Below are positions 25,696-54,090 of a DNA stretch of 64,000 nucleotides, piece after piece. The stretch is from positions 62,001 to 126,000 of IMG/VR virus record IMGVR_UViG_3300044701_003160; one strand, given 5' to 3'. Positions within the stretch are counted from its first letter, which is position 1; each line of letters opens with the position of its first letter. Both the position numbers and the translations under genes were made by a program. A model generated the notes under the pieces. That model worked only from the letters and a program-made list of their open reading frames with translations, had not been told where the DNA came from and ran no database searches.

Positions 25696-26757
25696 TCACA
25701 AGGCGTTCCCACGAGGGAGAACTTCATCTGGAAAGACAAATCGTTCCCCAGGTTGATCAACTGGAGCCATCCATGCCCTTAATCCCTCATTAAGAAGTAT
25801 ATTTTTTGTGTAAAATGTCTCAAATTCTGGATCTTCTGCTGCTCTAATTTCCTGAGATACAAAGTCGTAAGCACGGAGGTTAAGAGCAAGACCGATGATG
25901 CCGATAGAAGAAGTCCAGAGACCCATAACTGGAACGAAAAGCATAAAAAAGTGCAACCAACGCTTGTTACTAAAGGCAATACCGAAAATCTGAGACCAGA
26001 ATCTGTTAGCAGTAACCATTGAATAGGTCTCTTCCTCTTGTGTTGGTTCAAATGCCTTGAATGTGTTTGCTTGTTCACTGTCTTCAAATAGAGTGTTTTC
26101 TACAGTTGCTCCGTGAATGGCACAGAGCAGTGCTCCACCCAGTATACCAGCAACTCCCATCATATGGAAGGGGTTGAGGGTCCAGTTGTGGAAACCCTGA
26201 AGGAACAGAAGGAACCTGAAGATTGCTGCCACTCCAAAAGAGGGAGCAAAGAACCAACTGGATTGACCCAGTGGATACATCAGGAATACAGAAACGAATA
26301 CTGCAATAGGACCAGAGAATGCGATTGCGTTGTAGGGTCTAATCCCTACTAAACGAGCAATCTCAAACTGACGAAGCATAAAACCGATTAGAGCGAAAGC
26401 CCCGTGGAGCGCCACAAAAGGCCAGAGTCCCCCAAGTTGGCACCACCTGACGAAATCCCCTTGAGCCTCAGGACCCCAGAGAAGCATAAGAGAATGACCC
26501 ATAGAATCTGCTGGAGTAGAAACTGCCACAGTAAGAAAGTTTGCACCCTCCAGATAGGAACTTGCCAACCCGTGAGTGTACCAACTCGTAACGAAAGTTG
26601 TCCCAGTAAGCCAACCACCAAGAGCAAGATAAGCAGTGGGAAAAAGAAGAAGTCCAGACCAGCCAACAAAAACGAAACGATCTCTCTTAAGCCAGTCGTC
26701 CAAGACATCAAACCACCCCCTTTGTTGAATAGGTTTTGAAAGTGTAGATGAAACCAT
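25696..26757 (-). CDS. psbD: Photosystem II D2 protein
   Basis: Full length 353 aa: [13 protein letters not shown]...[14 protein letters not shown]...EVLPRGNAL. Confidence 0.99.
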
Positions 26758-26783
26758 AGCCTCCTCATTGATTTATCATATTT

Positions 26784-26812
26784 ATGTTAACAGTTCTTAA
26801 CAAAGAAGTCAA
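26784..26812 (-). promoter_or_regulatory. psbD sigma70-type promoter
   Basis: TTGACT(26807-26812)-N17-TAACAT(26784-26789); GAGGAGG RBS downstream. Confidence 0.7.
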
Positions 26813-26818
26813 TGAGTA

Positions 26819-27343
26819 TTAGTGCTTATGCTTTTGTAGGTATCTAACTGCGTTGCTTAATGTATCTAAGTTGTCTCCAACCAATCCTAGCATTCTGTTG
26901 CAGTTGCTACAAAGCAATCCACGAACCTTTCCTGTCTTATGGTCGTGGTCCACATAAAGGTTATTACTATCCTTTCTACCATTTGTATTTGGATTAAAAC
27001 AAATAACACAAACTTCATTTTGTTCTTGTAGAAGGTTTTTATATTGCTCTAATCCAAAATCTTCACCATAAGTATATTTCAACATATAGTCTTTCTTATC
27101 GTCATAAGAAGGTCTCTTATCTTTATAGTCTTTACTATAACACTCTTTACACCTCTTATGACCTTTATAATATTCTGAAATAAGTTTTTCTACACCACAC
27201 TTGTTGCAGACGATATGAGTTTTACTCGCCCAGTTTTCTGCATAAGTTTTTTCTTCACATCTTATACACCTTCTACGACCTTCTCTAAAATCAGAGACAG
27301 AAAGTTCTTTGTTGCAACTTCTACAAATCTTCGTGGTTCTCAT
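26819..27343 (-). CDS. Endonuclease VII-like free-standing homing endonuclease (F-CphI-like)
   Basis: CVIC...LYVDHDHKTGKVRGLLCSNCNRMLG; two N-terminal CxxC repeats; between psbA and psbD. Confidence 0.85.
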   Translation of the reverse strand: MRTTKICRSCNKELSVSDFREGRRRCIRCEEKTYAENWASKTHIVCNKCGVEKLISEYYKGHKRCKECYSKDYKDKRPSYDDKKDYMLKYTYGEDFGLEQYKNLLQEQNEVCVICFNPNTNGRKDSNNLYVDHDHKTGKVRGLLCSNCNRMLGLVGDNLDTLSNAVRYLQKHKH

Positions 27344-27386
27344 TATGGTATTTAAACTTTTAACTATTTATAAAATATTAAACTCC

Positions 27387-27424
27387 ATTATAACACAAAA
27401 AAAGAGACCCGTAAAGGGTCTCTA
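27387..27424 (-). terminator. psbA terminator overlapping a promoter
   Basis: GAGACCC-tttac-GGGTCTC-T7; TTTACG-N17-TATAAT. Confidence 0.75.
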
Positions 27425-27430
27425 ATTTTA

Positions 27431-28947
27431 TCAACCGATTGAAGGAGCAGTGAGAGCAACTGGTGTTGCTTCTGCTGCTGCAAGGTCAAGTGGGAAGTTG
27501 TGCTTACAGTTTGGACTATATCTTCACCATACTCTTTATGAGGTTAGGTGTCGGACGCTATTGGTGTATTACATCTCACGCTTGAGAAACCACCTAGTCT
27601 CTGAACCTTCCAATCAAGTTCGTGATTGGCTTGGCTGCTGATTGCCCGTTAGGGTTTCCAGCAATTCATCCGAAGTTTATCTTACCTTTTCAGATAAGAG
27701 CGCCCACAAATCGAGCGTTGCGTTCATGCATGACTTCCATTCCAAGTCCTGCACGATTTAGGACATCTGCCCAAGTGTTAATAACTTTACCTTGACTATC
27801 AACGATAGACTGGTTGAAGTTGAAACCGTTGCACTGAACCCATAAGTTTACCATTCTTATGGAGTGGACTATATCTTCATCCATTTAGGATGTTGGGCGC
27901 TATTGGTGTATTACATCTCACGCTTGAGAAACCACCTAGTCTCTGAACCTTTCCAAGAAGCGTCTTGGACTTGGCTGCTGATTACCCAATATGGAGGGCT
28001 TCCAGCAATTCACCCAATGTTTACCGTCAAATTGCTAGGACGGGACCCCGACGATTGAGGTTAAATGCCATCGTAGAAACACCAAGAGCAGTGAACCAGA
28101 TGCCTACAACAGGCCAGGCAGCCAGGAAGAAGTGCAGTGAACGGGAGTTATTAAAGGAAGCATATTGAAAAATAAGGCGTCCAAAATACCCGTGAGCAGC
28201 AACGATGTTGTAGGTCTCTTCTTCTTGACCGAACTTATATCCGTAGTTCTGTGACTCATTCTCAGTAGTTTCACGAACCAGTGAAGAAGTCACCAGTGAA
28301 CCGTGCATAGCACTGAAGAGTGAACCACCGAACACACCAGCAACTCCAAGCATGTGGAAGGGGTGCATCAGGATATTGTGTTCTGCTTGGAAGACAAGCA
28401 TATAGTTAAACGTACCAGAGATACCAAGAGGCATCGCATCAGAGAAAGAACCTTGACCGAAAGGATAAACCAGGAATACGGCAGAAGCAGCAGCAACAGG
28501 TGCGCTGTAAGCAACACAGATCCAAGGACGCATACCTAGACGGTAAGAGAGTTCCCATTCACGTCCCATATAAGCATAGATGCCGATGAGGAAGTGAAAT
28601 ACAACGAGTTGGAAAGGTCCACCGTTATAAAGCCATTCATCAAGAGAAGCAGCTTCCCAGATAGGATAGAAGTGAAGTCCGATAGCATTAGAAGAAGGAA
28701 CAACGGCACCAGAGATGATGTTGTTTCCGTACATTAGAGAACCAGCAACTGGTTCACGAATGCCGTCGATGTCCACTGGGGGAGCACCAACGAAAGCGAT
28801 AATGAAGCAAGTCGTAGCAGCAAGCAGGCAAGGAATCATCAGGACTCCGAACCAACCAACATACAGACGATTGTTAGTGGAAGTAACCCACTCACAGAAT
28901 TGGTTCCAGGTATTTGTGGAACGTTGTTGAGCAATTGTAGCAGTCAT
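27431..28947 (-). CDS. psbA: Photosystem II D1 protein, three exons (28058-28947, 27714-27831, 27431-27502)
   Basis: Joined exons give 1080 nt = 359 aa + stop, restoring ...[12 protein letters not shown]...[14 protein letters not shown]... Confidence 0.97.
27503..27713 (-). mobile_element. Group I intron 2 of psbA (211 nt, no ORF), after codon A336
   Basis: 5' exon ends in U, intron ends in G; core elements TCAGAGACTA and AAGATATAGTCC; guide UUUGUGGGCG pairs exon 2 end and exon 3 start (CACAA). Confidence 0.93.
27832..28057 (-). mobile_element. Group I intron 1 of psbA (226 nt, no ORF), within codon L297
   Basis: Exon ...AACCU / intron ...CAGUG / exon CAACGG restores frame; core AGAGACTA and AAGATATAGTCC; guide GGGGU pairs ACCU. 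Confidence 0.9.
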
Positions 28948-28949
28948 TT

Positions 28950-29070
28950 GTTTTAAAAGGGTAAGTATGATTCAGGGGGACTGAATGGTTACAAGTATTC
29001 CCACGACACCCTCCATCGTGGGTATGAGGGATGCTTTACTTCTCGTGATCCCGGTTGGAGAAGATTCCGT
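28950..29070 (-). ncRNA. Structured psbA 5' leader (PhotoRC-II-like RNA motif)
   Basis: Hairpins CTTCTC/GAGAAG, CCCACGA/TCGTGGG and ATTCAG/CTGAAT between promoter and psbA ATG; family name from recall. Confidence 0.6.
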
Positions 29071-29112
29071 AGGTAAGAAATTGTTACATTCCTTAACCCC
29101 GTGTATGTATAT

Positions 29113-29141
29113 ATAATAGCACTGTCAGGAAATGCTGTCAA
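29113..29141 (-). promoter_or_regulatory. psbA sigma70-type promoter
   Basis: TTGACA(29136-29141)-N17-TATTAT(29113-29118). Confidence 0.8.
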
Positions 29142-29183
29142 TAGGTCCAATTACCTAGGTGGCACAAGATAAATAAGAACCTT

Positions 29184-30434
29184 TTAGTAAATCTCTCTCC
29201 ATCTCATAGATACTCCAACATTACTAGGATCTGTTCCAATATTACTTACACGAACTGAAAAGATTTCTGAGTCTGTCGAATCAAAATTTTGTGTTAGATA
29301 ATTCTTTTTAGATGTTGGGCCTGATTGGGCAACAGTAGTTGTTGCTGATGGTTTTGTTACATTTTGACTGTCTCCTGCAGCATAACCACCCATAAAATCT
29401 TCAAAATATGTGGTGCTAATTCCAGTAGCACTTTCATTAAATTCAACAACAGATTCTGTATTTTCAGAAACCCAAGTTCCTGTCGTATTAATTCCAGTTG
29501 AACTTCGTAATTTTACAACTTCATATTTTACATTTGCCCCACTACTAAACACAGAGACATCTTCAAGTTTTACTGTTGCTCTATTTGGATATCCCTTAAA
29601 TGAATTCTTAAGTCTAATTGCAATAATTGGAACTGTAGTGCCTACACCAACAGTTCTAAGATTTGTTGTATGTGAAAATTCTCTTCCTGCCTCTGTATAT
29701 CCACCTTCACTCATTACACTAGAACAAATTTGAATAAAAGAACCTCCAGCACCTACTTGTGTTCCTACATTTCTAACCTCACATCTTACTGGAAGATTTG
29801 GATTAGACATATAAACTGTTGGGATATGATTTGAATTATAAAATTCGTGACAAACAACATTCTTACCATCGATTGAAAATCCGCAACGAACTCTACCAAC
29901 ACCTAACCATTCAAAGTCAGTAAAGAACAATTGAGTTTTGGTAATATCTAATGTAAATCCAGAAGGGTCTTGTCCTGTTAATCTATCTTTGTTCCATTGA
30001 GACTGAGTAACTCTTCTATCTGAAGCAATTCCAGTTACATAAGACCTAATTACGAAACTTAAAGTTCCATCTGGTGCTTGCTCAAAGAAAATTCCATCCC
30101 TATCATCAAAGTATCCAGTTCTCTTATAGACATTTTGCTGTGCCGTACCAAAATTAAATGTTGAGAAAATCAATTGAGATTTACCAGGCATATAATGATG
30201 ATATCTCTTTGTCTGGTGAATAGTATATCCATCAGTACTGATACCAGAACTTAAAATTGCTGCAGCTTGATTTACATCAAAAGTTACAGTTGCGCCAGTA
30301 CCTACCTTTACATCTATAAAGTCTGGGTCAATAGAATAAAGGTGCTTATAATCTCCAAGAGTAAATGGTTCTGATACCCTTAATCTTCCAAAAGCGTCAT
30401 CTCCGGGTTTCCACGGATCATATAAGTGTGACAT
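29184..30434 (-). CDS. Putative virion structural protein (beta-rich)
   Basis: DAFGRLRVSEP..., YHHYMPGKSQ, WLGVGRVRCGF; Thr/Ser/Gly-rich. Confidence 0.55.
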   Translation of the reverse strand: MSHLYDPWKPGDDAFGRLRVSEPFTLGDYKHLYSIDPDFIDVKVGTGATVTFDVNQAAAILSSGISTDGYTIHQTKRYHHYMPGKSQLIFSTFNFGTAQQNVYKRTGYFDDRDGIFFEQAPDGTLSFVIRSYVTGIASDRRVTQSQWNKDRLTGQDPSGFTLDITKTQLFFTDFEWLGVGRVRCGFSIDGKNVVCHEFYNSNHIPTVYMSNPNLPVRCEVRNVGTQVGAGGSFIQICSSVMSEGGYTEAGREFSHTTNLRTVGVGTTVPIIAIRLKNSFKGYPNRATVKLEDVSVFSSGANVKYEVVKLRSSTGINTTGTWVSENTESVVEFNESATGISTTYFEDFMGGYAAGDSQNVTKPSATTTVAQSGPTSKKNYLTQNFDSTDSEIFSVRVSNIGTDPSNVGVSMRWREIY

Positions 30435-31267
30435 TAGACTACCCTCCAACCATTTCTATAAACAAAAGTAAGTGACCCATAATCATAAGCAATAATTGCT
30501 CTGTCTCTACCATCAATAGTATCAGAACCAGATGGGAGAATTGTGATATATCTATTAACTCCTCTGGATGCTTCTCCAAGTTCATCTTTTACTATGTAGG
30601 TCTTTCCATCCTTCCTTGGTGTTGGAAGAGTGATTGTAACTGCTCCTGCATAATTAACACCAATATAATAATCTTGTGGAGTTATTGTATACGATGAAGT
30701 GGTGATATATGTAAGAGGCATATCCATATATGCCAGATTTGTCTCACCACCTCCACCTAATGTGGAAAGTTGTTGCTGTATTCTATTGAGAAACAGATTG
30801 TAATGTTTCTGTAAATCTTCAATTGTTGCAAACTTCTGATCTAAAGGAGCTAATGGATCTTGTTGAACTTTAGCATCCGATGGTTCTGCAAGAAGACCTA
30901 AAGATTTTTCTATAAGTGTAAGTTCTTTAGGTTTTTCTGAAGATTCTTCTACTATATTATCTACAATTTCCTGAACTTCTTCAATAACTTCTTCTACAAT
31001 TTCTTGTACTTCTTCTATTGGTTTTTCTTTTACTTTATCAGAATACAACCAATTCTCAAATGATTCTAAAGTTTTTTGCTCTTTCTTTTTTTGAATCTTA
31101 TTTTTTTTCTTTAGTGTCGTTACTTCTTCAAATACATTACTTAAATTCAAATCTCCAACAATAGAAGTAAATTCATCCTTCTGTCTTTTTTTCTCAGAAT
31201 TAACCAAAGAAAAAAAATCAGAAAGATTTAAACTATCTTCTATGTCTATAGGTTTCTTAAATTCCAC
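30434..31267 (-). CDS. Putative tail-fibre-associated protein
   Basis: Acidic coiled-coil N-half; C-terminal YYIGVNYAGAVTITLP...TYIVKDE.G...ITI..SGSDTIDG fibre-type module. Confidence 0.55.
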   Translation of the reverse strand: MEFKKPIDIEDSLNLSDFFSLVNSEKKRQKDEFTSIVGDLNLSNVFEEVTTLKKKNKIQKKKEQKTLESFENWLYSDKVKEKPIEEVQEIVEEVIEEVQEIVDNIVEESSEKPKELTLIEKSLGLLAEPSDAKVQQDPLAPLDQKFATIEDLQKHYNLFLNRIQQQLSTLGGGGETNLAYMDMPLTYITTSSYTITPQDYYIGVNYAGAVTITLPTPRKDGKTYIVKDELGEASRGVNRYITILPSGSDTIDGRDRAIIAYDYGSLTFVYRNGWRVV

Positions 31268-31339
31268 TTATAAACTATTAGCATTTCCTATGATAATATT
31301 TATTATATCATAAATATTTCGGTATCACAAAAACCTCAG

Positions 31340-31453
31340 ATGTCTAAGTCAGCAAACAAGGGTAAGAAGGGATCTGCTGGCGGGAAGCAGTCGAAACAAA
31401 ATTCTGGTAATGCGACTGCAAAGAAAGCCAAAAATGGTGGTAAGAAAAAGTGA
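31340..31453 (+). CDS. Small Lys/Gly-rich basic protein (37 aa)
   Basis: MSKSANKGKKGSAGGKQSKQNSGNATAKKAKNGGKKK; ATAAATA upstream. Confidence 0.6.
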   Translation: MSKSANKGKKGSAGGKQSKQNSGNATAKKAKNGGKKK

Positions 31454-31459
31454 GGATGT

Positions 31460-31651
31460 ATGCCACGAGAATGGAATACTCCAAATCGTGAGCCTTGGAA
31501 CGCACCGATACATAATATCCTAAAAGCAATAGACAATCACACTCACGAGTATTTTAAGAGTGGTGATATTTGGCATCTTGAAAAAGCAGATATGTTAAGA
31601 CAATACTTGCACGAATTAAAAACTTGGATTCATAAGACTGAAGGAAGATGA
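31460..31651 (+). CDS. Hypothetical protein
   Basis: 63-aa ORF with GAGG RBS. Confidence 0.65.
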   Translation: MPREWNTPNREPWNAPIHNILKAIDNHTHEYFKSGDIWHLEKADMLRQYLHELKTWIHKTEGR

Positions 31652-32064
31652 TTGAGATCTTGGAAGGCATTAGTATTTTAATTTCTATTGGAAACTCTCT
31701 GAAAGATCTTAAAGATAAATTCTTTAACTCAGAGAGAAGAAAAGAAATATCAGAATGGTTATATGAAATTGGAAGCGTTGTTGAAGACATAGCAATCTCT
31801 TTAGATAAGGGAGAATATCCTCATCAAACTTGTGCGAGAATGGGATATATTGCAGAAACTTTTTCTGATGTTGTTGGAGATGCAATCACCTCAAAGGAAG
31901 AAGAAAAACTAAAATACCTATTATATTCCTCAGTAAATATTGAAAAAACATTTGGAGAATATATGTCTCTTGAAGGATTTGATAAGACTACATATATTCA
32001 AGAACTCTATTCAATATCAGGTTCAATTTTGGGTATTGCAGACACATTAAAATATAAAAAATGA
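31648..32064 (+). CDS. Hypothetical protein
   Basis: 138 aa, ATGA-coupled. Confidence 0.65.
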   Translation: MIEILEGISILISIGNSLKDLKDKFFNSERRKEISEWLYEIGSVVEDIAISLDKGEYPHQTCARMGYIAETFSDVVGDAITSKEEEKLKYLLYSSVNIEKTFGEYMSLEGFDKTTYIQELYSISGSILGIADTLKYKK

Positions 32065-32210
32065 TTCACGATTTTCCTTGGGGAGTAGTAATTATACTTG
32101 GTAGTGGATTGATATTTACTGCTTGGATAATTTACTACATATTAAGAGTAGCATATCTGGAGATGAAAGATGTATCAGTACAAAATCAAGAAGATCAACA
32201 GAGTCATTGA
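32061..32210 (+). CDS. Small membrane protein (49 aa)
   Basis: MIHDFPWGVVIILGSGLIFTAWIIYYILRVAYLE...; ATGA-coupled. Confidence 0.55.
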   Translation: MIHDFPWGVVIILGSGLIFTAWIIYYILRVAYLEMKDVSVQNQEDQQSH

Positions 32211-32508
32211 TGGCGACACAGTTGATCTTGATATTGATTTAGGATTTTGGATTACTGTATCATATAAAGTCAGATTAAAGGATATTGATGCTGCTGAAAC
32301 TAGAACAAAAGATCTAGCAGAAAAAGCAGAAGGTCTAGCAGCAAAAGCATGGCTAGAAAAAGAACTCTCCCGTGAGGGAGAGTGGATTATTGAAACGACA
32401 AAAGAGGACAAGTATGGAAGAATACTTGGAACTCTTTATCTTGTTGGCGATCCTGTCACAGTTAATGAAAGAATGTTGAATGAAGGAATCGCAAAACCTT
32501 ATGTGTAA
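32170..32508 (+). CDS. Thermonuclease (SNase-like) protein
   Basis: RVIDGDTVDLDIDLGF...VRL..IDAAE.R...DKYGRILG...LNEG.A. Confidence 0.85.
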   Translation: MYQYKIKKINRVIDGDTVDLDIDLGFWITVSYKVRLKDIDAAETRTKDLAEKAEGLAAKAWLEKELSREGEWIIETTKEDKYGRILGTLYLVGDPVTVNERMLNEGIAKPYV

Positions 32509-32672
32509 TGAGAAAGAAACTTCTTCCCATTCTCATTCTTCTGAGACTTCTAATAAATGATGGTCTCTTTATGGAAAACCGAAGGACTCAACCTAAACCT
32601 CAACCACCAGAAGTTCGTGCTGCTATTCGTAGAACTTGGAAAAGAGGTAGGAAGTTATTTACGACTCCATAA
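32508..32672 (+). CDS. Small hypothetical protein (54 aa)
   Basis: MRKKLLPILILLRLLINDG...; start overlaps upstream stop. Confidence 0.45.
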   Translation: MRKKLLPILILLRLLINDGLFMENRRTQPKPQPPEVRAAIRRTWKRGRKLFTTP

Positions 32673-33128
32673 AGTACCTTCAGCAACTCTTCTTCTCAAT
32701 AACCCTTTTTCTACTTTAGTTCCAGGATTACGATAAAGTTCTAATGCCCCCGGAACTTTAGACCATTCTTTATTTCTAAGGACTTTTGTTATGGTATTAA
32801 AATTGGGATTCCCATAAAAATCAGCCCCAAGATTATAAGCAAAAGAAAGAAGTGCTCCTTGTTGATTCTCATTCATTTCGTTCCAATAAGGGATTTTTCG
32901 AAGTGAAGGAAGAAACCGATTTTCAAGATCAAATAGCAATAACCTATTTGCATATTCTTGAGTGATTATTTTTCCCATCTTAAAAGCAGATCCATCAAAA
33001 TCCTTCGTACTTCCCCATCCTACTGTGATTGGAAGTTTTCCAGTTAGTGGATCTGGATATGAGTGTAAATGACATCCTTCAAATTCTTTAATTAGAAAGA
33101 CACCACTTTGAGGAATTTGTGATGTCAT
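32655..33128 (-). CDS. GH24 lysozyme (endolysin)
   Basis: IKEFEGC.L.SYPDP..G..PITVGWGST...ALLSFAYNLG...GLLRRR.AE. Confidence 0.9.
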   Translation of the reverse strand: MTSQIPQSGVFLIKEFEGCHLHSYPDPLTGKLPITVGWGSTKDFDGSAFKMGKIITQEYANRLLLFDLENRFLPSLRKIPYWNEMNENQQGALLSFAYNLGADFYGNPNFNTITKVLRNKEWSKVPGALELYRNPGTKVEKGLLRRRVAEGTLWSRK

Positions 33129-33130
33129 TT

Positions 33131-33835
33131 CTACTTTTTTGCGTAAAAAATTCTACCCCAACCAGTCTTATCCTTATTATTTTCTAACCAACGATACTGA
33201 AGATCGGAACGCTTATAAACCGCACCTTTACCGTTAGTTACTGCACCTGTATATCCATCGTTCAAAGATCCATAGGGGTCATTAATAATATAATCTGTTC
33301 CTTTTTTACCAATTACTACACACATGTGACCGCCAGTAGGAGCAGATAAAGTACCGCGATGAAGAATCCCGATAACAACGGGTCTCCCAGCGGCAAGCTC
33401 ACGATCAAGATCAGCGAAACCAAGATTATACTTAAACTCAGACTTAATTCCATAATCAACAAGAACTTTTGTCTGAACTGAGTGATCAGTCGTATCTCCT
33501 GTTGCGAGAACTTTCTTAAGATAGGCATCGTCGCCCTTTGCTCCTGGAAGTGTTCCTGGTTTGAAGTACTCAAGACACATTGCACAAGAAGAAGAATTGC
33601 AAGTTCTATCTGGTTGAGTATAGTTATCTACCTGAGGAAAATAAGGAACGTTCAGAATTCCTGGTTGGGCTGGGGGTTCTTGTTTGGTTCTGTAGATACT
33701 AACCCAAGTACTGGAGTCATCCATTAACTCGGGTACTTTTGCAAGTAAATCTTTTTCAAGTTGCTCTACTGATGCAACGTGATTTGGATTCTTAGGATCG
33801 TAATGTAAAAAGAAATTGTGAAGATCAATTTGCAT
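33131..33835 (-). CDS. Peptidase C39-like protein
   Basis: LNVPYFPQ.DN...RTCNSSSCAM...GGHM.VVIG...IINDPYG. Confidence 0.8.
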   Translation of the reverse strand: MQIDLHNFFLHYDPKNPNHVASVEQLEKDLLAKVPELMDDSSTWVSIYRTKQEPPAQPGILNVPYFPQVDNYTQPDRTCNSSSCAMCLEYFKPGTLPGAKGDDAYLKKVLATGDTTDHSVQTKVLVDYGIKSEFKYNLGFADLDRELAAGRPVVIGILHRGTLSAPTGGHMCVVIGKKGTDYIINDPYGSLNDGYTGAVTNGKGAVYKRSDLQYRWLENNKDKTGWGRIFYAKK

Positions 33836-33865
33836 ACTTATACTCCTCCAAGATTATCTTATTTA

Positions 33866-34027
33866 TTAACGAGCATACTCATTAATCTTATCGAGTACCA
33901 TATTCAGGTACTGATCTGCAAGCGATTTGGGATCTGAGGTATAACCAATATGTTCGTTTTGTAGTTTCTGCTTTAACTTTAAGACTTGACATTTCATCTC
34001 ATCTTTTGTTAATTGTCCCCTTGGCAT
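33866..34027 (-). CDS. Small hypothetical protein (53 aa)
   Basis: MPRGQLTKDEMKCQVLKLKQKL...; CTAAATA upstream. Confidence 0.55.
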   Translation of the reverse strand: MPRGQLTKDEMKCQVLKLKQKLQNEHIGYTSDPKSLADQYLNMVLDKINEYAR

Positions 34028-34088
34028 TATACTAAAAAACTCTGATTCTTTATTTAGAAACAGAGTTTAAGTATTATTGCTTATTATA

Positions 34089-34616
34089 TCAAACTGGTGT
34101 GGTTTCCCTCACAGTTGATTTTACATATTCTAGAACTGCTTCTGGTGTTGATTCCTCATAAGGATCAGTCGGAGCATTATCTTGCCTTCCTGTTTCCTCA
34201 AAGAGTTTCTCAATAATCCCATTATCTACCACAGCAGCATATCTCCAAGAACGCTCACCAAAACCAAGATTGGTCTTGGCAACGAGTTGACCCATAGAAC
34301 GAGTGAAGTAAGCGTTGCCATCAGGAATTAGTTGTACGTTTTGAATGTTTTGATCTTGTGCCCAAGCATTCATCGTAAAAGCGTCATTAACAGAAATGCA
34401 GTAAATAGCATCGATGCCAAGGTCCCTGAATGTTCCATAGTTCTCCTCAAATCCTGGAAGTTGATATGCACTACAAGTGGGAGTAAACGCACCGGGAAGT
34501 GAGAAAATTACTACACGCTTGTTGTTAAAGAGTTCGGCAGAAGTACGAGTTACGAATTCACCTGCCTCACGGAAAATAAATTCTACTTGAGGAATTTGAT
34601 AACCTTCTCTACGCAT
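34089..34616 (-). CDS. Type II peroxiredoxin
   Basis: VVIFSLPGAFTPTCS...CISVNDAF.M.AW...PDGN..FT...RSWRYA. Confidence 0.92.
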   Translation of the reverse strand: MRREGYQIPQVEFIFREAGEFVTRTSAELFNNKRVVIFSLPGAFTPTCSAYQLPGFEENYGTFRDLGIDAIYCISVNDAFTMNAWAQDQNIQNVQLIPDGNAYFTRSMGQLVAKTNLGFGERSWRYAAVVDNGIIEKLFEETGRQDNAPTDPYEESTPEAVLEYVKSTVRETTPV

Positions 34617-34627
34617 AATACCCTCCA

Positions 34628-34738
34628 TCAGAATACGCCAGGAATAATTTGTCCAGTCAGTGCATAAGCACCCATAGCAGCGACGACACCAATCATCGCA
34701 AACCAACCATTAATACGCTCAGCCTTTTCGTTAAACAT
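34628..34738 (-). CDS. hli: High-light-inducible protein (36 aa)
   Basis: MFNEKAERINGWFAMIGVVAAMGAYALTGQIIPGVF: AExxNGxxAMIG motif; missed by ORF track. Confidence 0.9.
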   Translation of the reverse strand: MFNEKAERINGWFAMIGVVAAMGAYALTGQIIPGVF

Positions 34739-34749
34739 TGTTTTTTTCC

Positions 34750-34836
34750 TCAATAAGTTTCAGAAAGTTGATTGACAGAATGTGCAAGAAGCACGAAAAA
34801 AGAAATACTAGTTACAGTAAAAATGAGTTCGCTCAT
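34750..34836 (-). CDS. Small hydrophobic peptide (28 aa) between hli genes
   Basis: MSELIFTVTSISFFVLLAHSVNQLSETY; start overlaps upstream stop. Confidence 0.5.
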   Translation of the reverse strand: MSELIFTVTSISFFVLLAHSVNQLSETY

Positions 34837-35045
34837 TAGATCACACCAAAGAAGAGGTGGCCTGTGAGTGCATAAGAAATAATTGCTGCAACGAATCCCA
34901 GCATCGCAGTACGGCCATTCAGTCGCTCTGCTCTTTCAGCATAAGTCTCAAGTGCATAACGCTCAGCATCAGTCTGAGAGATATACATCTGAGGTTCTTT
35001 GGCAAACATATTCTGCTGCCCACGCTCATTTGTTGTAACGGTCAT
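34836..35045 (-). CDS. hli: High-light-inducible protein
   Basis: AERLNGRTAMLGF; TTNERGQQNMFAKEP N-terminus. Confidence 0.93.
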   Translation of the reverse strand: MTVTTNERGQQNMFAKEPQMYISQTDAERYALETYAERAERLNGRTAMLGFVAAIISYALTGHLFFGVI

Positions 35046-35072
35046 TTTAGTTTTATTAAGAACTGTAACAAT

Positions 35073-35110
35073 ATTATATAGGAAAAATAAAGGGGCGTCA
35101 AGCCCCTTAT
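35073..35110 (-). terminator. pstS terminator overlapping hli promoter
   Basis: AAGGGGC-ttgac-GCCCCTT-T-rich; TTGACG-N17-TATAAT. Confidence 0.8.
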
Positions 35111-35118
35111 GTAAGAAT

Positions 35119-36084
35119 TTACTGACCGATACGCTTCACGGCAAGTCGTGATTTATTAAGAATGCTACCTGCAAGAGGAACATAACCCAAATCATCAGCA
35201 ATCATTTGTGCCTTTGCACTCAGAGCATAGTTGAGTGCCTGTTGAATATCACCTGCTTTCCTAGCACTATTACCAGTCTTATAGGCAAGAACCCAAGTCA
35301 GAGTGGAGATAGGATATGCACCAGAGGCAGAAGGATTGGGATTTTCACCAGCAAGATTTGCATCCAGTTTAATGGAGTTAAGAGCAATAGCACCAGACTT
35401 AGCAGTAGGAAGAACAAACTGCCCTGCCTTATTTTGAAGAGCAGCAACTTGCAGTTTGTTCGACTTCACAAATCCAGTATTTACATAACCAATTGAACCA
35501 GCAGTTTGGCGAATTGTTCCAGAGACACCTTCGTTTCCTTTACCACCAAGACCAACGGGCCAATTGACGGACTTACCTACACCAGGTTTCCAACCACCAA
35601 AAGCATCCAGAGAGTTAGTGAATGCAAAAGTAGTTCCAGAACCATCAGAACGATGAACAACAGTCATAGGACCTGCAGCACATCCAACTTGCTTCCAATC
35701 ACGGATACGACCTGAGAAAATATCCACAGTTTGCTTCTGAGTGAGTTTCAGAGAGCATCCTGCTTTGTTATAGGCAATCGCAATCGTTCCACCCACCATA
35801 GGGATTTGAACGACACCACGCTTCACTTTAGATGCCTCTTTTGACGAGATAGGTTCGTCAGTTGCTCCGAAGTCAACTGTACCCGCAACGAATTGACGGA
35901 CACCAGCACCAGAACCAACCGACTGGTAGTTTACACGATTTCCAGATGATTGTGCATAATCTTGGAACCAACGCTGATAGAGAGGTGCAGGAAAGGTTGC
36001 ACCAGCACCATTAATAGGGGGTCCGGCAATTGCCGCAACAGGAGCAGCAACTAGACCAGCAGCAATAAGGTTTTTAAGTTTCAT
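35119..36084 (-). CDS. pstS: Phosphate-binding protein
   Basis: GAGATFPAPLY..W; YQSVGSGAG..QF; HRSDGSGTT; GKGNEGV; YPISTLTW. Confidence 0.95.
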   Translation of the reverse strand: MKLKNLIAAGLVAAPVAAIAGPPINGAGATFPAPLYQRWFQDYAQSSGNRVNYQSVGSGAGVRQFVAGTVDFGATDEPISSKEASKVKRGVVQIPMVGGTIAIAYNKAGCSLKLTQKQTVDIFSGRIRDWKQVGCAAGPMTVVHRSDGSGTTFAFTNSLDAFGGWKPGVGKSVNWPVGLGGKGNEGVSGTIRQTAGSIGYVNTGFVKSNKLQVAALQNKAGQFVLPTAKSGAIALNSIKLDANLAGENPNPSASGAYPISTLTWVLAYKTGNSARKAGDIQQALNYALSAKAQMIADDLGYVPLAGSILNKSRLAVKRIGQ

Positions 36085-36143
36085 AAAAATTTGTTTAGAA
36101 GTGAAATAGACTTCTTAGAAATCATAAGAGAAGATGAAAAATA

Positions 36144-36176
36144 AGTCCACTAAGATTTGGTTAAGAAGTTCATAAC
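36144..36176 (-). promoter_or_regulatory. Pho-box-like direct repeats upstream of pstS
   Basis: GTTATGA / CTTAACC / CTTAGTG at an 11-bp period. Confidence 0.55.
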
Positions 36177-36179
36177 ATA

Positions 36180-36208
36180 AAAAAGCACCCAAAGAATGGG
36201 TGCTTTCA
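36180..36208 (-). terminator. Porin terminator
   Basis: AAAGCACCCA-ttctt-TGGGTGCTTT-TTT. Confidence 0.8.
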
Positions 36209-36228
36209 CTCAGATTATGAGTAATTTA

Positions 36229-37710
36229 TCAGAAGGTGAACTTGGTCTGAACCACTCCACCCCAGGAAGATTCACCTCGGAACCTTTGGTCGTTGCTCAC
36301 ATAGAAGAGAGCAGGAGTGATGCTGATGTTATCAGATACACGATACTTATAGAAGATTTCAAGCATCGTGGCATCATCACCAATGAATTCAGAATTACCA
36401 GGTTGACCAACGGCAACACCAGCGGTATTACCTTGAGCAAATACATCAGACCACTGAAGTCCAACGAACCAAGAATCAGAATCGGTAGCACCAGTCTTAG
36501 AACCGTCACCACTTACACCATTGTAACCATAACCAGCTGAGATAGAAGGAACAAACCCACTCTCAGAAGGTTGCCAGTAAGCATTCAGAGCAACGCTATT
36601 GCTTTCCTGACCAGCAGCAAGGGCACCAGAACCGCCTCCAAGGGCATTAAAGGTACGAACACGACTGCCTTCAGTACCATAACGGTAAGCAACAGCAGCA
36701 CCCCACTGAGGAGCACGATAGCCAACCTGAGCAAGGAGGTTGATTCCAGAATCAGAGTTGAATGCACCTGTCTGAGAACTGTCACCATCTTGGGAAACAT
36801 AATTCAGACCAGCAACAAATCCACCTTGACCTTTCTTGGTGGGTTGCTTCCACTGAGCACCAACACCAGCACCAGTTGCCTTGTTATAAACACCAGAGGC
36901 ACCGCCAAGTTGGAAGAAGTCCAGGATTTCCGACTTATAAGCAGAAGGAACCCAAGCCATTTCCGTGTTACGAACCAGAGGACCAGCAGTCAGAGTTACA
37001 CTCTTACTAACTGGGAACTGATAGTAAAGACGGTCAATTGTAACCTGATCAGCAAGGGATTCTGCCTTATCAAGTTTGAACAGAGAAGAACTGGAACCAA
37101 AAGGATCGCTACTGAAGTTACCGGAACGCAGACGAGTGCGGAGCAGGTCCTTACCAGTGAACGAGGTATCAAAGTTCAGACGAACATCATAATTAAATGC
37201 AGTATTACCCACATCGACACCTTTGTTAGTTTCAAGACCAGGAACTCCACCAAGAACAAAGTTTACCTCACCCTTGAGTTTAGTTGTGGTGGAGAATTGT
37301 GTTGCTTCCAAGTTTCCAACACGATTTTCCAGACCATCAACACGACCCTTGAGTACGGCAAGTTCACTCTTGAATTCGTCCAGCAGTTTCCGAAGTTCAT
37401 CTGTAGTTTCAGTTACACGATCCAAGCAAGCATTCAGAAGAGCAGCTGCTTCATAACGGGTCATTGCCTGGCCACCAACAAAAGTGCCATTAGGATAACC
37501 AGCAACGCAACCATAACGCTCTACAAGATTGCTGAGTGCCTGATATGCCCAATCAGAAGGTTGAACATCAGTAAATTGTGTAATGCTAGTAACCTGGGCA
37601 GCAGAGGCATACTTGTTGACATCCTCAATATTGAGTTCTGCAGCATTCACCGCAGGAGCAACAAGACCCAGTGCAACAGGCACGAGCATCAGTTGTTTGA
37701 GAAAATTCAT
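36229..37710 (-). CDS. Cyanobacterial Som-type outer-membrane porin (SLH + carbohydrate-selective porin barrel)
   Basis: Signal peptide; SLH motif FTDVQPSDWAYQAL..LVERYGCVAGYPNGTF...TRYEAAA; coiled coil; FSTTTKL.GE; terminal ...TKFTF. Confidence 0.93.
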   Translation of the reverse strand: MNFLKQLMLVPVALGLVAPAVNAAELNIEDVNKYASAAQVTSITQFTDVQPSDWAYQALSNLVERYGCVAGYPNGTFVGGQAMTRYEAAALLNACLDRVTETTDELRKLLDEFKSELAVLKGRVDGLENRVGNLEATQFSTTTKLKGEVNFVLGGVPGLETNKGVDVGNTAFNYDVRLNFDTSFTGKDLLRTRLRSGNFSSDPFGSSSSLFKLDKAESLADQVTIDRLYYQFPVSKSVTLTAGPLVRNTEMAWVPSAYKSEILDFFQLGGASGVYNKATGAGVGAQWKQPTKKGQGGFVAGLNYVSQDGDSSQTGAFNSDSGINLLAQVGYRAPQWGAAVAYRYGTEGSRVRTFNALGGGSGALAAGQESNSVALNAYWQPSESGFVPSISAGYGYNGVSGDGSKTGATDSDSWFVGLQWSDVFAQGNTAGVAVGQPGNSEFIGDDATMLEIFYKYRVSDNISITPALFYVSNDQRFRGESSWGGVVQTKFTF

Positions 37711-37773
37711 AAATGTGTTTTTTTGTTAAACGACAAGTGTTAAGAATTATAACTAATTCTCAACAACGTATTT

Positions 37774-37802
37774 AGTATAGTCGGTAACTTCAGTCTTGTC
37801 AA
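37774..37802 (-). promoter_or_regulatory. Porin sigma70-type promoter
   Basis: TTGACA-N17-TATACT. Confidence 0.75.
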
Positions 37803-50643: not shown

Positions 50644-50649
50644 GGGTCT

Positions 50650-50842
50650 TTTAGGCTCGCCACCAATTCTTTGACTGGAAATTGGAAACCAGGCGGGAGT
50701 AAGATCCCATCCGCACCACCAATCCTTGAGAGAGATTGGAAACTCATAATAGGGTCATATTGACTCCACCAGTACTTTTAGAGTCTCTCCGTGACTAAAG
50801 GGGTTCATCACCGACCAGGGCTAGTTTTAAGTCATACCGGGA
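50650..50842 (-). ncRNA. Structured ~190-nt RNA (manA/wcaG-type cyanophage motif candidate)
   Basis: No ORF; hairpins CCAATC/GATTGG, GCGG/CCGC, CCAATT/AATTGG; UGGUG and UGGCG motifs; lies between tRNA region and glycan genes. Confidence 0.6.
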
Positions 50843-52314: not shown

Positions 52315-52388
52315 TCGGGACGATAGGATTTGAACCTACGGCCTGACGCTCCCAAAGCGCCTGCTCTACCAAACTGAGCTACGTCCCG
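52315..52388 (-). tRNA. tRNA-Pro(TGG)
   Basis: CGGGACG/CGTCCCG; anticodon loop TTTGGGA. Confidence 0.95.
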
Positions 52389-52412
52389 ATTTCTTTGTGT
52401 ATCCTATCAGGT

Positions 52413-52571
52413 TTATCGAACCCTGTCAACCACCTGAAGAACACCGTGAGCATAAAAGAAAAGGAGTACTGAACCGATTGTTGCTGATATTATTGTAGCA
52501 GTTTTATTGTGCCTGTCAATGGCTTTTGCAACTGACTGGTCGATCATTTCTTGAACTTCTTCAGGTGTCAT
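52413..52571 (-). CDS. Small membrane protein (52 aa)
   Basis: MTPEEVQEMIDQSVAKAIDRHNK...IGSVLLFFYAHGVL. Confidence 0.55.
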   Translation of the reverse strand: MTPEEVQEMIDQSVAKAIDRHNKTATIISATIGSVLLFFYAHGVLQVVDRVR

Positions 52572-52716
52572 TTTTATTACCAAGAAATTTTGCCAGAGGA
52601 TCTCTTTTTGTTCTAATTATTTCACACGCTCTTTTATAAAACATATTATCAGTATTACCTGATGATTCAAACGTTTCCTTTATTTTAACCCAATTTTGGT
52701 ATGTGTGATCATCCAT
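52561..52716 (-). CDS. Small hypothetical protein (51 aa)
   Basis: MDDHTYQNWVKIKETFESSGNTDNMFYKRACEI... Confidence 0.6.
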   Translation of the reverse strand: MDDHTYQNWVKIKETFESSGNTDNMFYKRACEIIRTKRDPLAKFLGNKNDT

Positions 52717-52803
52717 TTGGGATCTATACGTTATTATTACTAATTTAGTTTAATTAACAATCTTATTTTGTCAAGTATGTGTGGATATCATCATAATTTT
52801 AAA

Positions 52804-52888
52804 CGGTGAGGAAAGGATTCGAACCTTCGGATGCTTTCACATCGACTGTTTTCAAGACAGTTGCCTTAAACCACTCGGCCACCTCACC
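52804..52888 (-). tRNA. tRNA-Ser(TGA)
   Basis: GGTGAGG/CCTCACC; ACTGT-CTTGAAA-ACAGT; long variable arm. Confidence 0.95.
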
Positions 52889-53243
52889 ATATTATTTCCA
52901 ATAAACCAGCGTGTATTTTACGATGACACGGAGAACAGAGCATATAACATTTATCTATTTCTGTTTGGATTGTCTCCCATTTGTATCCTTTTCCCGCTAA
53001 GTAAGAAACTTCCTTTTTCTTATTTTCTGCCTCAATATGATGAAAATCAAAACAACAGGGAGGATGGTAATCTCCACAAGCATCACAACAACCTTTTTCA
53101 AGTTTTAATTGATTTAGTTTTTCAACCATCAACTTTTTATTATTATATTCTCTTTGGTATTTAATTTTTTTAAATTCTCCAGATTGTTTTTGAGCCCAAA
53201 GACGTTGTGCTTCTTTTTGCTTTTCTTTATCTTTATAAGGCAT
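52884..53243 (-). CDS. HNH endonuclease
   Basis: CDACG..HPPCCFDFHH...EIDKCYMLCSPCHRKIH; stop overlaps tRNA-Ser 5' end. Confidence 0.85.
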   Translation of the reverse strand: MPYKDKEKQKEAQRLWAQKQSGEFKKIKYQREYNNKKLMVEKLNQLKLEKGCCDACGDYHPPCCFDFHHIEAENKKKEVSYLAGKGYKWETIQTEIDKCYMLCSPCHRKIHAGLLEIIW

Positions 53244-53284
53244 ATCATTTAAAAGGTTCTAATTTATTTATAAAAAATTAGAAC

Positions 53285-53536
53285 TTAACGGACTTCGAAA
53301 TCAAGACGCCTCACTTTTCTTTGGCGTCTTTGTTCTTGCCAGGCAATATCCTGGGAGGTTAACACGTTTGTTTTTGGTGTTTCCTTTAATGAGTTTAGCA
53401 TTACAATACGGGATAAGTCAACTGCCGAAATCTTATCTCCTCTAATTGTTGCCATATTGGGACATCCACAACTAATAGTTTTTGAAGAGTGCCCCACTAA
53501 TTCTTTACTGCAATCTTTGCATCTTATTGATATCAT
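53285..53536 (-). CDS. Hypothetical Zn-ribbon protein
   Basis: CKDC...CGCPN. Confidence 0.65.
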   Translation of the reverse strand: MISIRCKDCSKELVGHSSKTISCGCPNMATIRGDKISAVDLSRIVMLNSLKETPKTNVLTSQDIAWQEQRRQRKVRRLDFEVR

Positions 53537-53551
53537 TTTTTGTTACCGTAA

Positions 53552-53986
53552 TCACTGTAAATGTGCTCTTAATTGCCAAACAAATTTTCCGTGAGATTCC
53601 ATCAAATCTTGAACTAGATTGGCAGTTGCATAAGATTTTTGAGTTTCAGACTCTTCCGAAATTTCACCCATTAACTCACAAAATTTAGTATTGTTATCCA
53701 AAAGTTCTTGAAGCATCTCTTTTGCTCCCGTAGAACTTGTTGCTTCTTTGATTTGAGTTACTTCAAGCATTCTTGAAAGAGAACTTAAAGGTTTTACATT
53801 TAAGTATCTCATATGTTCGGAGAGCCTGTCAATCTCTTCAAACATCGTTTCATATTGTCCACCAAACAGTTGATGAAGTTGAGTAAAGTCTTCACCTACA
53901 ACATTCCAGTGAAATGCCCAGGTTTTATGGAACAAAACAAAAAGTGATGACTGAGCATCACTGAGTAATTTATAAAGTTTTTCCAT
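53552..53986 (-). CDS. dps: Dps/ferritin-like DNA-protection protein
   Basis: KTWAFHWNVVG.DF.QLH.LF..QY...EIDRLSEH ferroxidase pattern. Confidence 0.9.
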   Translation of the reverse strand: MEKLYKLLSDAQSSLFVLFHKTWAFHWNVVGEDFTQLHQLFGGQYETMFEEIDRLSEHMRYLNVKPLSSLSRMLEVTQIKEATSSTGAKEMLQELLDNNTKFCELMGEISEESETQKSYATANLVQDLMESHGKFVWQLRAHLQ

Positions 53987-54014
53987 TATACTTTTTTTCA
54001 AGTATTTATGCAAA

Positions 54015-54087
54015 TGGGAGCAGAGGGATTCGAACCCCCGACATTCTGCGTGTAAAGCAGACGCTGCTACCGCTGAGCTATGCTCCC
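54015..54087 (-). tRNA. tRNA-Val(TAC)
   Basis: GGGAGCA/TGCTCCC; TCTGC-TTTACAC-GCAGA. Confidence 0.95.
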
Positions 54088-54090
54088 TTG

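What the first reader, a model, noticed from the sequence alone, without database searches (positions are those of the whole stretch)
26786..37753. Shared TTAAG-N4-(G/A)TAAC motif at psbA, psbD, hli and porin promoters
Seen: TTAAGGAATGTAAC (psbA, 29083-29096, sense), TTAAGAACTGTTAAC (psbD, 26786-26800, over the -10), TTAAGAACTGTAAC (hli, 35056-35069, antisense), TTAAGAATTATAAC (porin, 37740-37753, antisense). All overlap or lie just downstream of the promoter. The GTTACA half resembles the RpaB HLR1 site, but the half-site spacing is 9 rather than 10. Inference: an operator placing four host-derived genes under one light/redox regulator.
Basis: partly seen in the sequence, partly recalled or inferred. 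Interest (0 to 1): 0.6.

Follow-up and report, generated by a model that had tools for sequence, protein, structure and literature searches.

The report
HLR1-like operator on cyanophage photosynthesis genes
A freshwater cyanophage carries the same 16-base promoter-proximal motif at its psbA, psbD, hli and porin genes; it matches the site that the host light/redox regulator RpaB binds at host hli genes, so the phage probably borrows host light control, an idea already noted in the literature but not tested.

Summary
All four sequences are present as described, each next to a conserved promoter on the minus strand. The motif is real. A weight matrix learned only from hli promoters of 65 other phages, scanned over this 219-kb genome, gives hli, porin and psbA as the five best intergenic hits; psbD ranks 14th. 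The motif recurs at the same places in related phages: 17 of 52 psbA leaders, against 0.5% of background windows.

It is colinear with HLR1 sites just after the -10 of host hli genes in Prochlorococcus, Synechococcus, Microcystaceae and Phormidesmis. Phage MED4-213 has a 15/16 canonical HLR1 at the same position.

All four sites lie between about -25 and +30 of the predicted transcription starts. That is mostly within the zone where RpaB represses in low light.

There are two complications. At psbA and porin the motif is also part of a sense-strand 5'-leader hairpin. The generic HLR1 consensus is not enriched in this AT-rich genome.

RpaB binding and light response are untested. HLR1 sites in cyanophage genomes have been mentioned before, so this is a new member of a known kind.

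The parts
26787..26802 (+). psbD site. It reads TTAACAGTTCTTAACA on the plus strand, antisense to psbD. It fills the -35/-10 spacer and the first bases of the -10.
   Evidence: Orthologous psbD promoters in about 17 phages carry GTTAAGGAATGTTAAG at the same place; its antisense TTAACATT-CC-TTAACAAA matches HLR1 at 14/16. The hli matrix scores it 7.9 bits, intergenic rank 14.
26779..26812 (-). psbD promoter: -35 TTGACT (26807-26812), 17-nt spacer, -10 TAACAT (26784-26789), then AAATA (a T4-late-like box).
   Evidence: The transcription start is predicted, not mapped.
29083..29100 (+). psbA site. It reads GTTACATT-CC-TTAACCCC on the plus strand, antisense to psbA. A second, overlapping match, TGTAACAATTTCTTAC, lies on the minus strand at 29073-29088.
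   Evidence: 12.5 and 13.3 bits; genome ranks 9 and 6. The block GTTAAGRAATGTAAC is the most conserved stretch of class-A psbA leaders. 17 of 52 leaders score >=12 bits, against 0.47% of background windows.
29068..29101 (-). psbA 5'-leader hairpin, which contains the motif in its 5' arm and loop.
   Evidence: sense strand -10.7 kcal/mol, z -3.2; antisense -2.5, z +0.6. A hairpin is present in 48 of 48 related leaders. Stem mismatches: 17 G:T against 4 A:C.
29108..29142 (-). psbA promoter: -35 TTGACA (29137-29142), 17-nt spacer, -10 TATTAT (29113-29118), then ATATA.
   Evidence: In relatives it reads TTGACA-N17-TATGAT-AAATA.
28987..29076 (-). PhotoRC-II RNA motif in the psbA leader, immediately 3' of the hairpin.
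   Evidence: RF01717, 49.5 bits against a gathering score of 39.
35052..35069 (-). hli site. It reads GTTACAGT-TC-TTAATAAA on the gene-sense strand, from 3 nt after the -10 to 7 nt before the ATG.
   Evidence: 17.0 bits, rank 1 in the genome. The position is conserved in 65 phage hli promoters. At the same place S-RIM2 has GTAACAGT-TC-TTTACATA and MED4-213 has GTTACAGT-TC-TTTACAAA, a 15/16 HLR1 match.
35073..35108 (-). hli promoter: -35 TTGACG (35096-35101), which sits in the loop of the pstS terminator hairpin GGGGC/GCCCC (35092-35106); 17-nt spacer; -10 TATAAT (35073-35078).
37738..37753 (-). Porin site. It reads GTTATAATTCTTAACA on the gene-sense strand and forms the loop and 3' arm of the leader hairpin.
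   Evidence: 14.3 bits on both strands; genome ranks 4 and 5. Conserved as AGTTAGATTTCTTAACA in L017/L019 and TGTTGGAATTCTTAACA in L039.
37738..37765 (-). Porin 5'-leader hairpin with a 12-bp stem.
   Evidence: sense strand -12.5 kcal/mol, z -3.9; antisense -7.0, z -1.8. The arms differ but still pair in L019 and L039.
37769..37802 (-). Porin promoter: -35 TTGACA (37797-37802), 17-nt spacer, -10 TATACT (37774-37779), then AAATA.

Best explanation
The motif is a phage version of the cyanobacterial HLR1 operator, the binding site of the host OmpR-family response regulator RpaB. It consists of two half-sites 10 bp apart: (G/T)T(T/A)A(C/T)A, then N4 (usually nTTC), then TTAA(C/T)A.

The sites sit over or just downstream of sigma70-type promoters. 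From predicted transcription starts the positions are: psbD about -25 to -10, hli about -3 to +15, psbA about +7 to +24, and porin about +11 to +30.

Shown: the motif exists, is shared by these genes, is conserved across phages, and matches host hli operators.

Inferred: host RpaB occupies these sites in low light and blocks host RNA polymerase. High light, or a reduced photosystem I acceptor side, releases RpaB and de-represses the phage PSII repair genes (psbA, psbD, hli) and the porin. The T4-late-like box abutting the -10 of psbA, psbD and porin would then allow regulator-independent late transcription.

At psbA and porin the same sequence also forms a 5'-terminal hairpin in the mRNA. This is probably a second, RNA-level layer (stability or processing) placed on top of the operator.
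For: (1) Independent matrix test. A 16-nt matrix (consensus TGTAACAATTCTTAAC) was learned only from hli promoters of 65 other phages. Scanned over all 219 kb, it gives hli, porin (both strands) and psbA (two overlapping sites) as the top five intergenic hits. No column-permuted matrix of 200 gave 5 or more intergenic hits at about the 12.5-bit cut-off (mean 0.9, maximum 4). At a strict 12.5 bits the real matrix gives 4, because the weaker psbA hit lies just under the cut-off.

(2) Conservation across phages. 17 of 52 distinct psbA leaders score >=12 bits within 70 nt of the promoter, against 0.47% of random windows (nominal binomial p 4e-27). In about 1 Mb of related loci, at least 41 of 78 hits >=12 bits lie directly upstream of hli, psbA, psbD or porin. 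In both psbA leader classes the most conserved block after the promoter is an HLR1-like 16-mer on the antisense strand: GTTACATTYCTTAAC or GTAACATTTGTTTACC.

(3) Host link. Prochlorococcus hli genes carry GTTA[CT]ATTnnTT[AT]A[CA]A just after the -10, with the same TTAAYA variant half-site. The phage-trained matrix also finds sites directly upstream of hli in Prochlorococcus, a Synechococcus MAG, Microcystaceae (15.8 bits) and Phormidesmis, and in Synechococcus MIT S9503. MED4-213 has a 15/16 canonical HLR1 at the orthologous hli position.

(4) Literature. HLR1 is KTTACAWW-N2-KTTACAWW. RpaB represses when the site overlaps -38 to +23 and activates from -66 to -45; hli genes are repressed targets (PMC13421787; PMC6525291). 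In MED4 the HLI gene module is the one most enriched in RpaB motifs (bioRxiv 2026.04.15.718746).

(5) Candidate regulators. The phage has no OmpR-type DNA-binding domain, while the Prochlorococcus genomes have only three each.
Against: No binding or expression data exist, and the transcription starts are only predicted.

In this phage each site matches the canonical consensus at only 12-13 of 16 positions. There are 211 sites with <=3 mismatches in the genome. The generic pattern KTWACANNNNKTWAYA is no commoner than its reversed control, 3 against 3.

The linker TTC is conserved although HLR1 leaves those positions free. Many hli promoters instead read TGTAAAGATTTACA, an inverted rather than direct arrangement.

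The psbA and porin copies are arms of sense-biased RNA hairpins, which could explain their conservation without any protein. The porin site extends past +23.

High-GC Synechococcus psbA and psbD promoters show no such operator. The true freshwater host is unknown.
Confidence: 0.5

Rival explanations
1. RNA-level element. At psbA and porin the conserved object is a 5'-terminal mRNA hairpin that stabilises or processes the leader, for example by protecting it against 5'-end-dependent RNase E/J. On this reading the resemblance to HLR1 is a by-product of AU-rich stems with arms AAGRAAU/AUUYCUU.
For: A hairpin follows the promoter in 48 of 48 related psbA leaders (mean z -2.4). Its sequence classes and loop lengths (3-20 nt) differ.

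Stem mismatches are 17 G:T against 4 A:C, the bias expected for pairing in the sense RNA. Window folds favour the sense strand: psbA -10.7 against -2.5 kcal/mol, porin -12.5 against -7.0.

The porin arms differ between phages but still pair. Host Synechococcus psbA leaders also begin with a hairpin of unrelated sequence.
Against: The psbD copy lies upstream of the transcription start, and the hli leader has no stable fold (-0.2 kcal/mol, z +0.6), yet both carry the motif.

In class-A psbA leaders the 5' arm plus loop is far more conserved than the 3' arm. That is not expected from pairing alone.

RNAalifold finds no consensus for class A and only 7 weakly covarying pairs for class B. Averaged over relatives, sense and antisense energies are close (-9.5 against -8.4).
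Confidence: 0.2
2. An operator for a different DNA-binding protein: another host OmpR-family regulator (RpaA, or PhoB acting on the pstS-porin neighbourhood) or an unrecognised phage-encoded factor that coordinates auxiliary metabolic genes.
For: The half-site CTTAAC also occurs in the Pho-box-like repeats upstream of the adjacent pstS gene.

The conserved TTC linker, and the inverted TGTAA...TTACA arrangements in many hli promoters, go beyond the published HLR1 definition.

The porin is not a classical RpaB target; it is not mentioned in PMC6525291.
Against: The period is 10, not the 11 of the pstS repeats CTTAACCA-AAT-CTTAGTGG, and the first half is GTTACA.

An NtcA site (GTA-N8-TAC) does not fit: the motif is TGTA-N9-TACA at best.

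The phage has no OmpR-type domain. Host hli genes, textbook RpaB targets, carry the colinear motif. I could not retrieve the RpaA motif for comparison.
Confidence: 0.15
3. No dedicated regulation. The similarity reflects shared ancestry or shuffling of promoter-leader cassettes among auxiliary genes, or sequence preferences of the initially transcribed region, plus chance in AT-rich intergenic DNA.
For: psbA, psbD and porin share one unusual promoter type, TTGAC-N17-TAnnnT-A[AT]ATA. The hli promoter is fused to a terminator hairpin, like the mobile promoter/stem-loop cassettes of T4-type phages (own knowledge).

The motif is not over-represented genome-wide: 8 hits >=12.5 bits against 7.7 for permuted matrices. 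It also does not appear among the enriched intergenic 7-mers.
Against: The flanks of the four sites are otherwise dissimilar. The motif keeps its position and orientation at each gene across highly diverged phages. The same word occurs at host hli genes in distant cyanobacteria.
Confidence: 0.1

Closest known systems
HLR1 (high light regulatory 1) operator bound by RpaB at cyanobacterial hli, psbA, nblA and PSI promoters
   Same: Two half-sites of the TTACA type with a 10-bp period (8+2+8). The location overlaps the core promoter or transcription start, as at light-repressed hli genes. The motif is colinear with sites just after the -10 of host hli genes. HLR1 occurrences in cyanophage genomes have already been mentioned (PMC6525291, citing a 2018 review that I could not read).
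   Different: In this phage the second half is TTAAYA rather than TTTACA, and the linker nTTC is conserved. One site serves a porin. Two sites double as arms of RNA hairpins. Neither binding nor light response has been tested.
Pho box / host PhoB control of cyanophage pstS (Zeng and Chisholm 2012; own knowledge)
   Same: The logic is the same: a phage auxiliary gene is wired into a host two-component response regulator through a host-type operator. A Pho-box-like repeat lies upstream of pstS in this window, between hli and the porin.
   Different: Pho boxes have an 11-bp period and PyTTAAPyPyW units, and they activate from upstream of the -10. The motif studied here has a 10-bp period and a GTTACA first half, and it sits in repressing positions.
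PhotoRC-II RNA motif (Rfam RF01717) in cyanophage psbA leaders
   Same: It lies in the same 5' UTR. The hairpin that carries the motif abuts the 5' end of the Rfam match (28987-29076).
   Different: The motif and hairpin lie outside the curated model, apart from a few bases of overlap. The motif also occurs at genes without PhotoRC-II.
Promoter-early stem-loop (PeSL) cassettes of T4-type phages (own knowledge)
   Same: The hli promoter has its -35 in the loop of a GC-rich terminator hairpin, followed by a T-run and a -10.
   Different: PeSLs are not known to carry an operator downstream of the -10. This resemblance concerns only the hli promoter context.

Membership tests
HLR1 / RpaB operator | Two imperfect 8-bp direct repeats KTTACAWW separated by 2 nt (10-bp period) | tested here: met
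   The four sites read TTAACAGT-TC-TTAACAAA (psbD), GTTACATT-CC-TTAACCCC (psbA), GTTACAGT-TC-TTAATAAA (hli) and GTTATAAT-TC-TTAACACT (porin): the architecture and period fit, with 12-13 of 16 positions matching. Orthologues reach 14-15 of 16.
HLR1 / RpaB operator | Statistical match to the canonical consensus above background | tested here: inconclusive
   There are 211 sites with <=3 mismatches in the genome. The generic pattern is no commoner than its reversed control, 3 against 3. Significance comes only from the hli-trained matrix and from cross-phage conservation.
HLR1 / RpaB operator | Position -66 to -45 (activation) or -38 to +23 (repression) relative to the transcription start | tested here: inconclusive
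   Starts were predicted from conserved -35/-10 elements only. On that basis psbD is at -25 to -10, hli at -3 to +15, psbA at +7 to +24, and porin at +11 to +30, partly outside the zone (zone from PMC13421787). No RNA run holds this phage.
HLR1 / RpaB operator | Association with high-light-responsive genes, and homologous sites at host genes | tested here: met
   hli, psbA and psbD carry the motif. Colinear sites lie upstream of host hli genes in Prochlorococcus, Synechococcus, Microcystaceae and Phormidesmis.
HLR1 / RpaB operator | Specific binding by RpaB, and de-repression on a shift to high light | not testable with these tools
   Needs EMSA, ChIP and reporter or infection experiments.
Pho box (PhoB/SphR) | At least two 8-bp units PyTTAAPyPyW with an 11-bp period (own knowledge of the consensus) | tested here: not met
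   The four sites have a 10-bp period and a GTTACA-type first half. The 11-bp arrangement is found only upstream of pstS: CTTAACCA-AAT-CTTAGTGG.
NtcA site | GTA-N8-TAC palindrome (own knowledge of the consensus) | tested here: not met
   The matrix consensus gives TGTA-N9-TACA at best. No N8 arrangement occurs at any of the four sites.
5'-leader RNA hairpin | Stable, strand-specific stem kept by covariation just after the transcription start | tested here: met
   Met for psbA and porin only. Not met for hli. Not applicable to psbD, whose site lies upstream of the transcription start.

The most novel reading that the evidence does not exclude
The element is a phage-adapted composite rather than a plain RpaB site. 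On this reading, an HLR1-derived word with its own conserved TTC linker works both as a DNA operator and as the arm of a sense-strand 5' hairpin. It would be read by a regulator other than RpaB, such as an unrecognised phage protein or an RNA-binding factor. That would define a phage-specific regulon of auxiliary genes that includes an outer-membrane porin.
Probability: 0.15. Interest if true: 0.75.

Novelty: new member of a known kind. Interest (0 to 1): 0.5.

Why it matters
If host RpaB really gates phage psbA, psbD and hli, cyanophages would read the host's photosynthetic redox state to time their PSII-repair genes. That would be the light counterpart of the known PhoB-pstS case for phosphate.

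It would also give a concrete, mutable cis-element for testing how light controls cyanophage gene expression and productivity.

The same element occurs in cultured systems: S-RIM2 on Synechococcus WH7803 and MED4-213 on Prochlorococcus MED4. The question is therefore directly testable.

Two features have not, to my knowledge, been described: the porin's membership of the set, and the overlap of an operator with a leader hairpin.

Tried and rejected
- Canonical HLR1 scan with <=3 mismatches: 211 hits, so it does not discriminate in a 36% GC genome.
- Strand-collapsed 7-mer enrichment in intergenic DNA found only terminators, ATAAATA and TTGAC, not this motif.
- The half-site GTTAAGRAAT with <=1 mismatch is only 1.7-fold enriched in intergenic DNA.
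- Pho box and NtcA readings do not fit the spacing.
- A phage-encoded OmpR-type regulator was sought and not found.
Class B gave 7 pairs with little covariation.
- High-GC Synechococcus psbA and psbD promoters show no comparable operator. They have only a TGTTAAGGT-type extended -10 at psbD and a different 5' hairpin at psbA.
- The search for sequencing runs found only freshwater DNA metagenomes and no RNA, so no transcription starts could be read.
- The Syn9 transcriptome paper (Doron et al. 2016) and the 2018 RpaB review that lists phage HLR1 sites are not held. The RpaA motif could not be retrieved.
- Lower-ranked matrix hits (window 41692; genome positions 41427, 6089 and 214616) showed no convincing promoter context.
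- My first two attempts at motif sampling failed for technical reasons.


Full report
**Context.** The window is bases 62001-126000 of a 219,018-bp IMG/VR cyanomyovirus with 35.7% G+C. Its DNA turns up only in freshwater metagenomes. The finding concerns a run of minus-strand genes:
- psbD, 25696-26757.
- An HNH/endonuclease VII ORF, 26819-27343.
- psbA, 27434-28947, in three exons with two group I introns.
- hli, 34836-35045.
- pstS, 35119-36084.
- An OprB+SLH porin, 36229-37710.

A PhotoRC-II RNA motif lies in the psbA leader at 28987-29076.

**Observation.** TTAAGNNNTRTAAC occurs three times in the window against 0.13 expected. After re-alignment, KTWAYANNTCTTAAYA hits psbD, hli and porin against 0.04 expected. 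Both patterns were defined after the fact, so I looked for independent evidence.

**Promoter anatomy.** Comparing 80 psbA loci and 80 hli loci from IMG/VR shows conserved sigma70-type promoters at all four genes. psbA, psbD and porin share an unusual form, TTGAC-N17-TAnnnT followed directly by A[AT]ATA, a T4-late-like box. Only about five of 34 promoter-like sites in this genome have this form. The hli promoter is TTGACG-N17-TATAAT, with the -35 in the loop of the pstS terminator hairpin.

Relative to predicted transcription starts the motif spans:
- psbD about -25 to -10.
- hli about -3 to +15.
- psbA about +7 to +24.
- porin about +11 to +30.

The TATAAT inside the porin motif is not a conserved -10.

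**Is it one motif?** I trained a 16-nt matrix by Gibbs sampling on the region between the -10 and the ATG of 65 hli promoters from other phages. The consensus is TGTAACAATTCTTAAC. Scanned over the whole genome on both strands:
- The best hit is hli (17.0 bits).
- Ranks 4 and 5 are the porin site.
- Ranks 6 and 9 are two overlapping psbA sites.
- The top five intergenic hits are exactly these. psbD is intergenic rank 14.

Of 200 column-permuted matrices, none gave five or more intergenic hits at about this threshold (mean 0.9, maximum 4). At a strict 12.5 bits the real matrix itself counts four, because the weaker psbA hit falls just below the cut-off. The total number of hits is not elevated, 8 against 7.7. 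The motif is therefore rare and concentrated at these promoters, not a general promoter component. This agrees with the k-mer survey.

**Conservation.** In related phages:
- 17 of 52 distinct psbA leaders have a match of at least 12 bits within 70 nt of the promoter, against 0.47% of random 70-nt windows.
- At least 41 of 78 such hits in about 1 Mb lie directly upstream of hli, psbA, psbD or porin.
- psbD promoters carry GTTAAGGAATGTTAAG in the -35/-10 spacer. This is a direct repeat with a 10-bp period, and its antisense matches HLR1 at 14 of 16 positions.
- In both classes of psbA leader the most conserved block after the promoter is an HLR1-like 16-mer on the antisense strand.
- Porin leaders of three distinct phages keep ..TTCTTAACA.
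- Orientation is conserved at each gene.

**Identity.** The published HLR1 is KTTACAWW-N2-KTTACAWW. RpaB represses when the site overlaps -38 to +23, and hli genes are classic repressed targets.

Aligned as GTTACA/TTAAYA, the phage motif has the canonical 10-bp period.

Host Prochlorococcus hli genes carry GTTA[CT]ATTnnTT[AT]A[CA]A immediately after their -10, with the same TTAAYA variant. The phage-trained matrix also picks out sites directly upstream of hli in a Synechococcus MAG, Microcystaceae and Phormidesmis and in Synechococcus MIT S9503.

Cultured phages have the element at the orthologous hli position. S-RIM2 reads GTAACAGT-TC-TTTACATA, and MED4-213 reads GTTACAGT-TC-TTTACAAA, a 15/16 match.

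The phage encodes no OmpR-type DNA-binding domain. The Prochlorococcus genomes examined have three each.

**Complications.** Four points weaken the simple reading.
- The canonical consensus alone does not discriminate here: 211 sites have three or fewer mismatches, and the generic pattern equals its reversed control.
- The linker TTC is conserved beyond the HLR1 definition. Many hli promoters show an inverted TGTAAAGATTTACA arrangement instead.
- At psbA and porin the motif is part of a hairpin that starts within a few bases of the predicted transcription start:
  - All 48 related psbA leaders fold (mean z -2.4).
  - Stem mismatches are 17 G:T against 4 A:C.
  - In this phage the sense strand folds far better than the antisense: -10.7 against -2.5 kcal/mol for psbA and -12.5 against -7.0 for porin.
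  - Against a purely RNA explanation: hli has no stable fold; the psbD site is upstream of the start; and the 5' arm plus loop of the psbA hairpin is much better conserved than the 3' arm.
- The sequences compared are phylogenetically related, so the nominal p-values overstate independence.

**Conclusion.** The shared motif is real. It is best read as a host-type HLR1 operator placed in repressing positions at phage hli, psbD and psbA, and less certainly at the porin. A 5'-leader hairpin is superimposed at psbA and porin.

Binding by RpaB and light or redox responsiveness are inferences. HLR1 occurrences in cyanophage genomes are already mentioned in the literature, so this is a new, more fully documented member of a known kind.

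Noticed in passing
window 27434-28947 (-), with 26819-27343 (-): psbA is split into three exons (28947-28054, 27830-27711, 27502-27434) by two group I introns (Rfam hits 27840-28067 and 27491-27723). An HNH/endonuclease VII ORF lies between psbA and psbD.
   Followed up: partly
window about 36147-36165 (-), upstream of pstS 35119-36084: A Pho-box-like tandem, CTTAACCA-AAT-CTTAGTGG with an 11-bp period, is conserved upstream of pstS in loci L017/L019 and L039. pstS sits between hli and the porin.
   Followed up: partly
window 35090-35108 (-): The pstS terminator hairpin GGGGC-TTGAC-GCCCC plus T-run carries the hli -35 hexamer in its loop. The arrangement is conserved in many cyanomyoviruses.
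   Followed up: partly
window 26779-26812, 29108-29142, 37769-37802 (-): psbD, psbA and porin share a composite promoter: a sigma70 -35/-10 immediately followed by A[AT]ATA, which resembles the T4-type late box. Only about five of 34 promoter-like sites in the genome have this form.
   Followed up: partly
window 50649-50747 (-); 52315-55511 (-); 55519-55555 (-): A wcaG RNA motif (98 bits), an array of eight tRNA genes, and an abiF RNA hit (44.9 bits against a gathering score of 37).
   Followed up: no
window 36229-37710 (-): The phage encodes a full-length cyanobacterial-type outer-membrane porin (SLH + OprB, 493 aa) next to pstS. Homologues are present in only about 10 of 80 related loci.
   Followed up: partly
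L030:5860 and L078:1012: In two related phages a strong motif match (TGTAACGATTTACAAC, 17.4 bits) precedes a 126-aa protein with a signal peptide that looks like a small outer-membrane protein (not searched against family libraries). It may be another member of the set.
   Followed up: no
G000:C1:4960-5075 (-), outside the window: Another sigma70-type promoter is followed by a long leader hairpin with arms AATGTAAGGAAGA / TCTTCCTTACATT, which resemble the psbA hairpin arms.
   Followed up: no
whole record: Near-identical DNA was found only in freshwater metagenomes (four runs, two studies, with at least 68% of sampled words) and in no RNA run. The host is probably a freshwater picocyanobacterium, although the closest cultured relatives infect marine Synechococcus.
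   Followed up: partly
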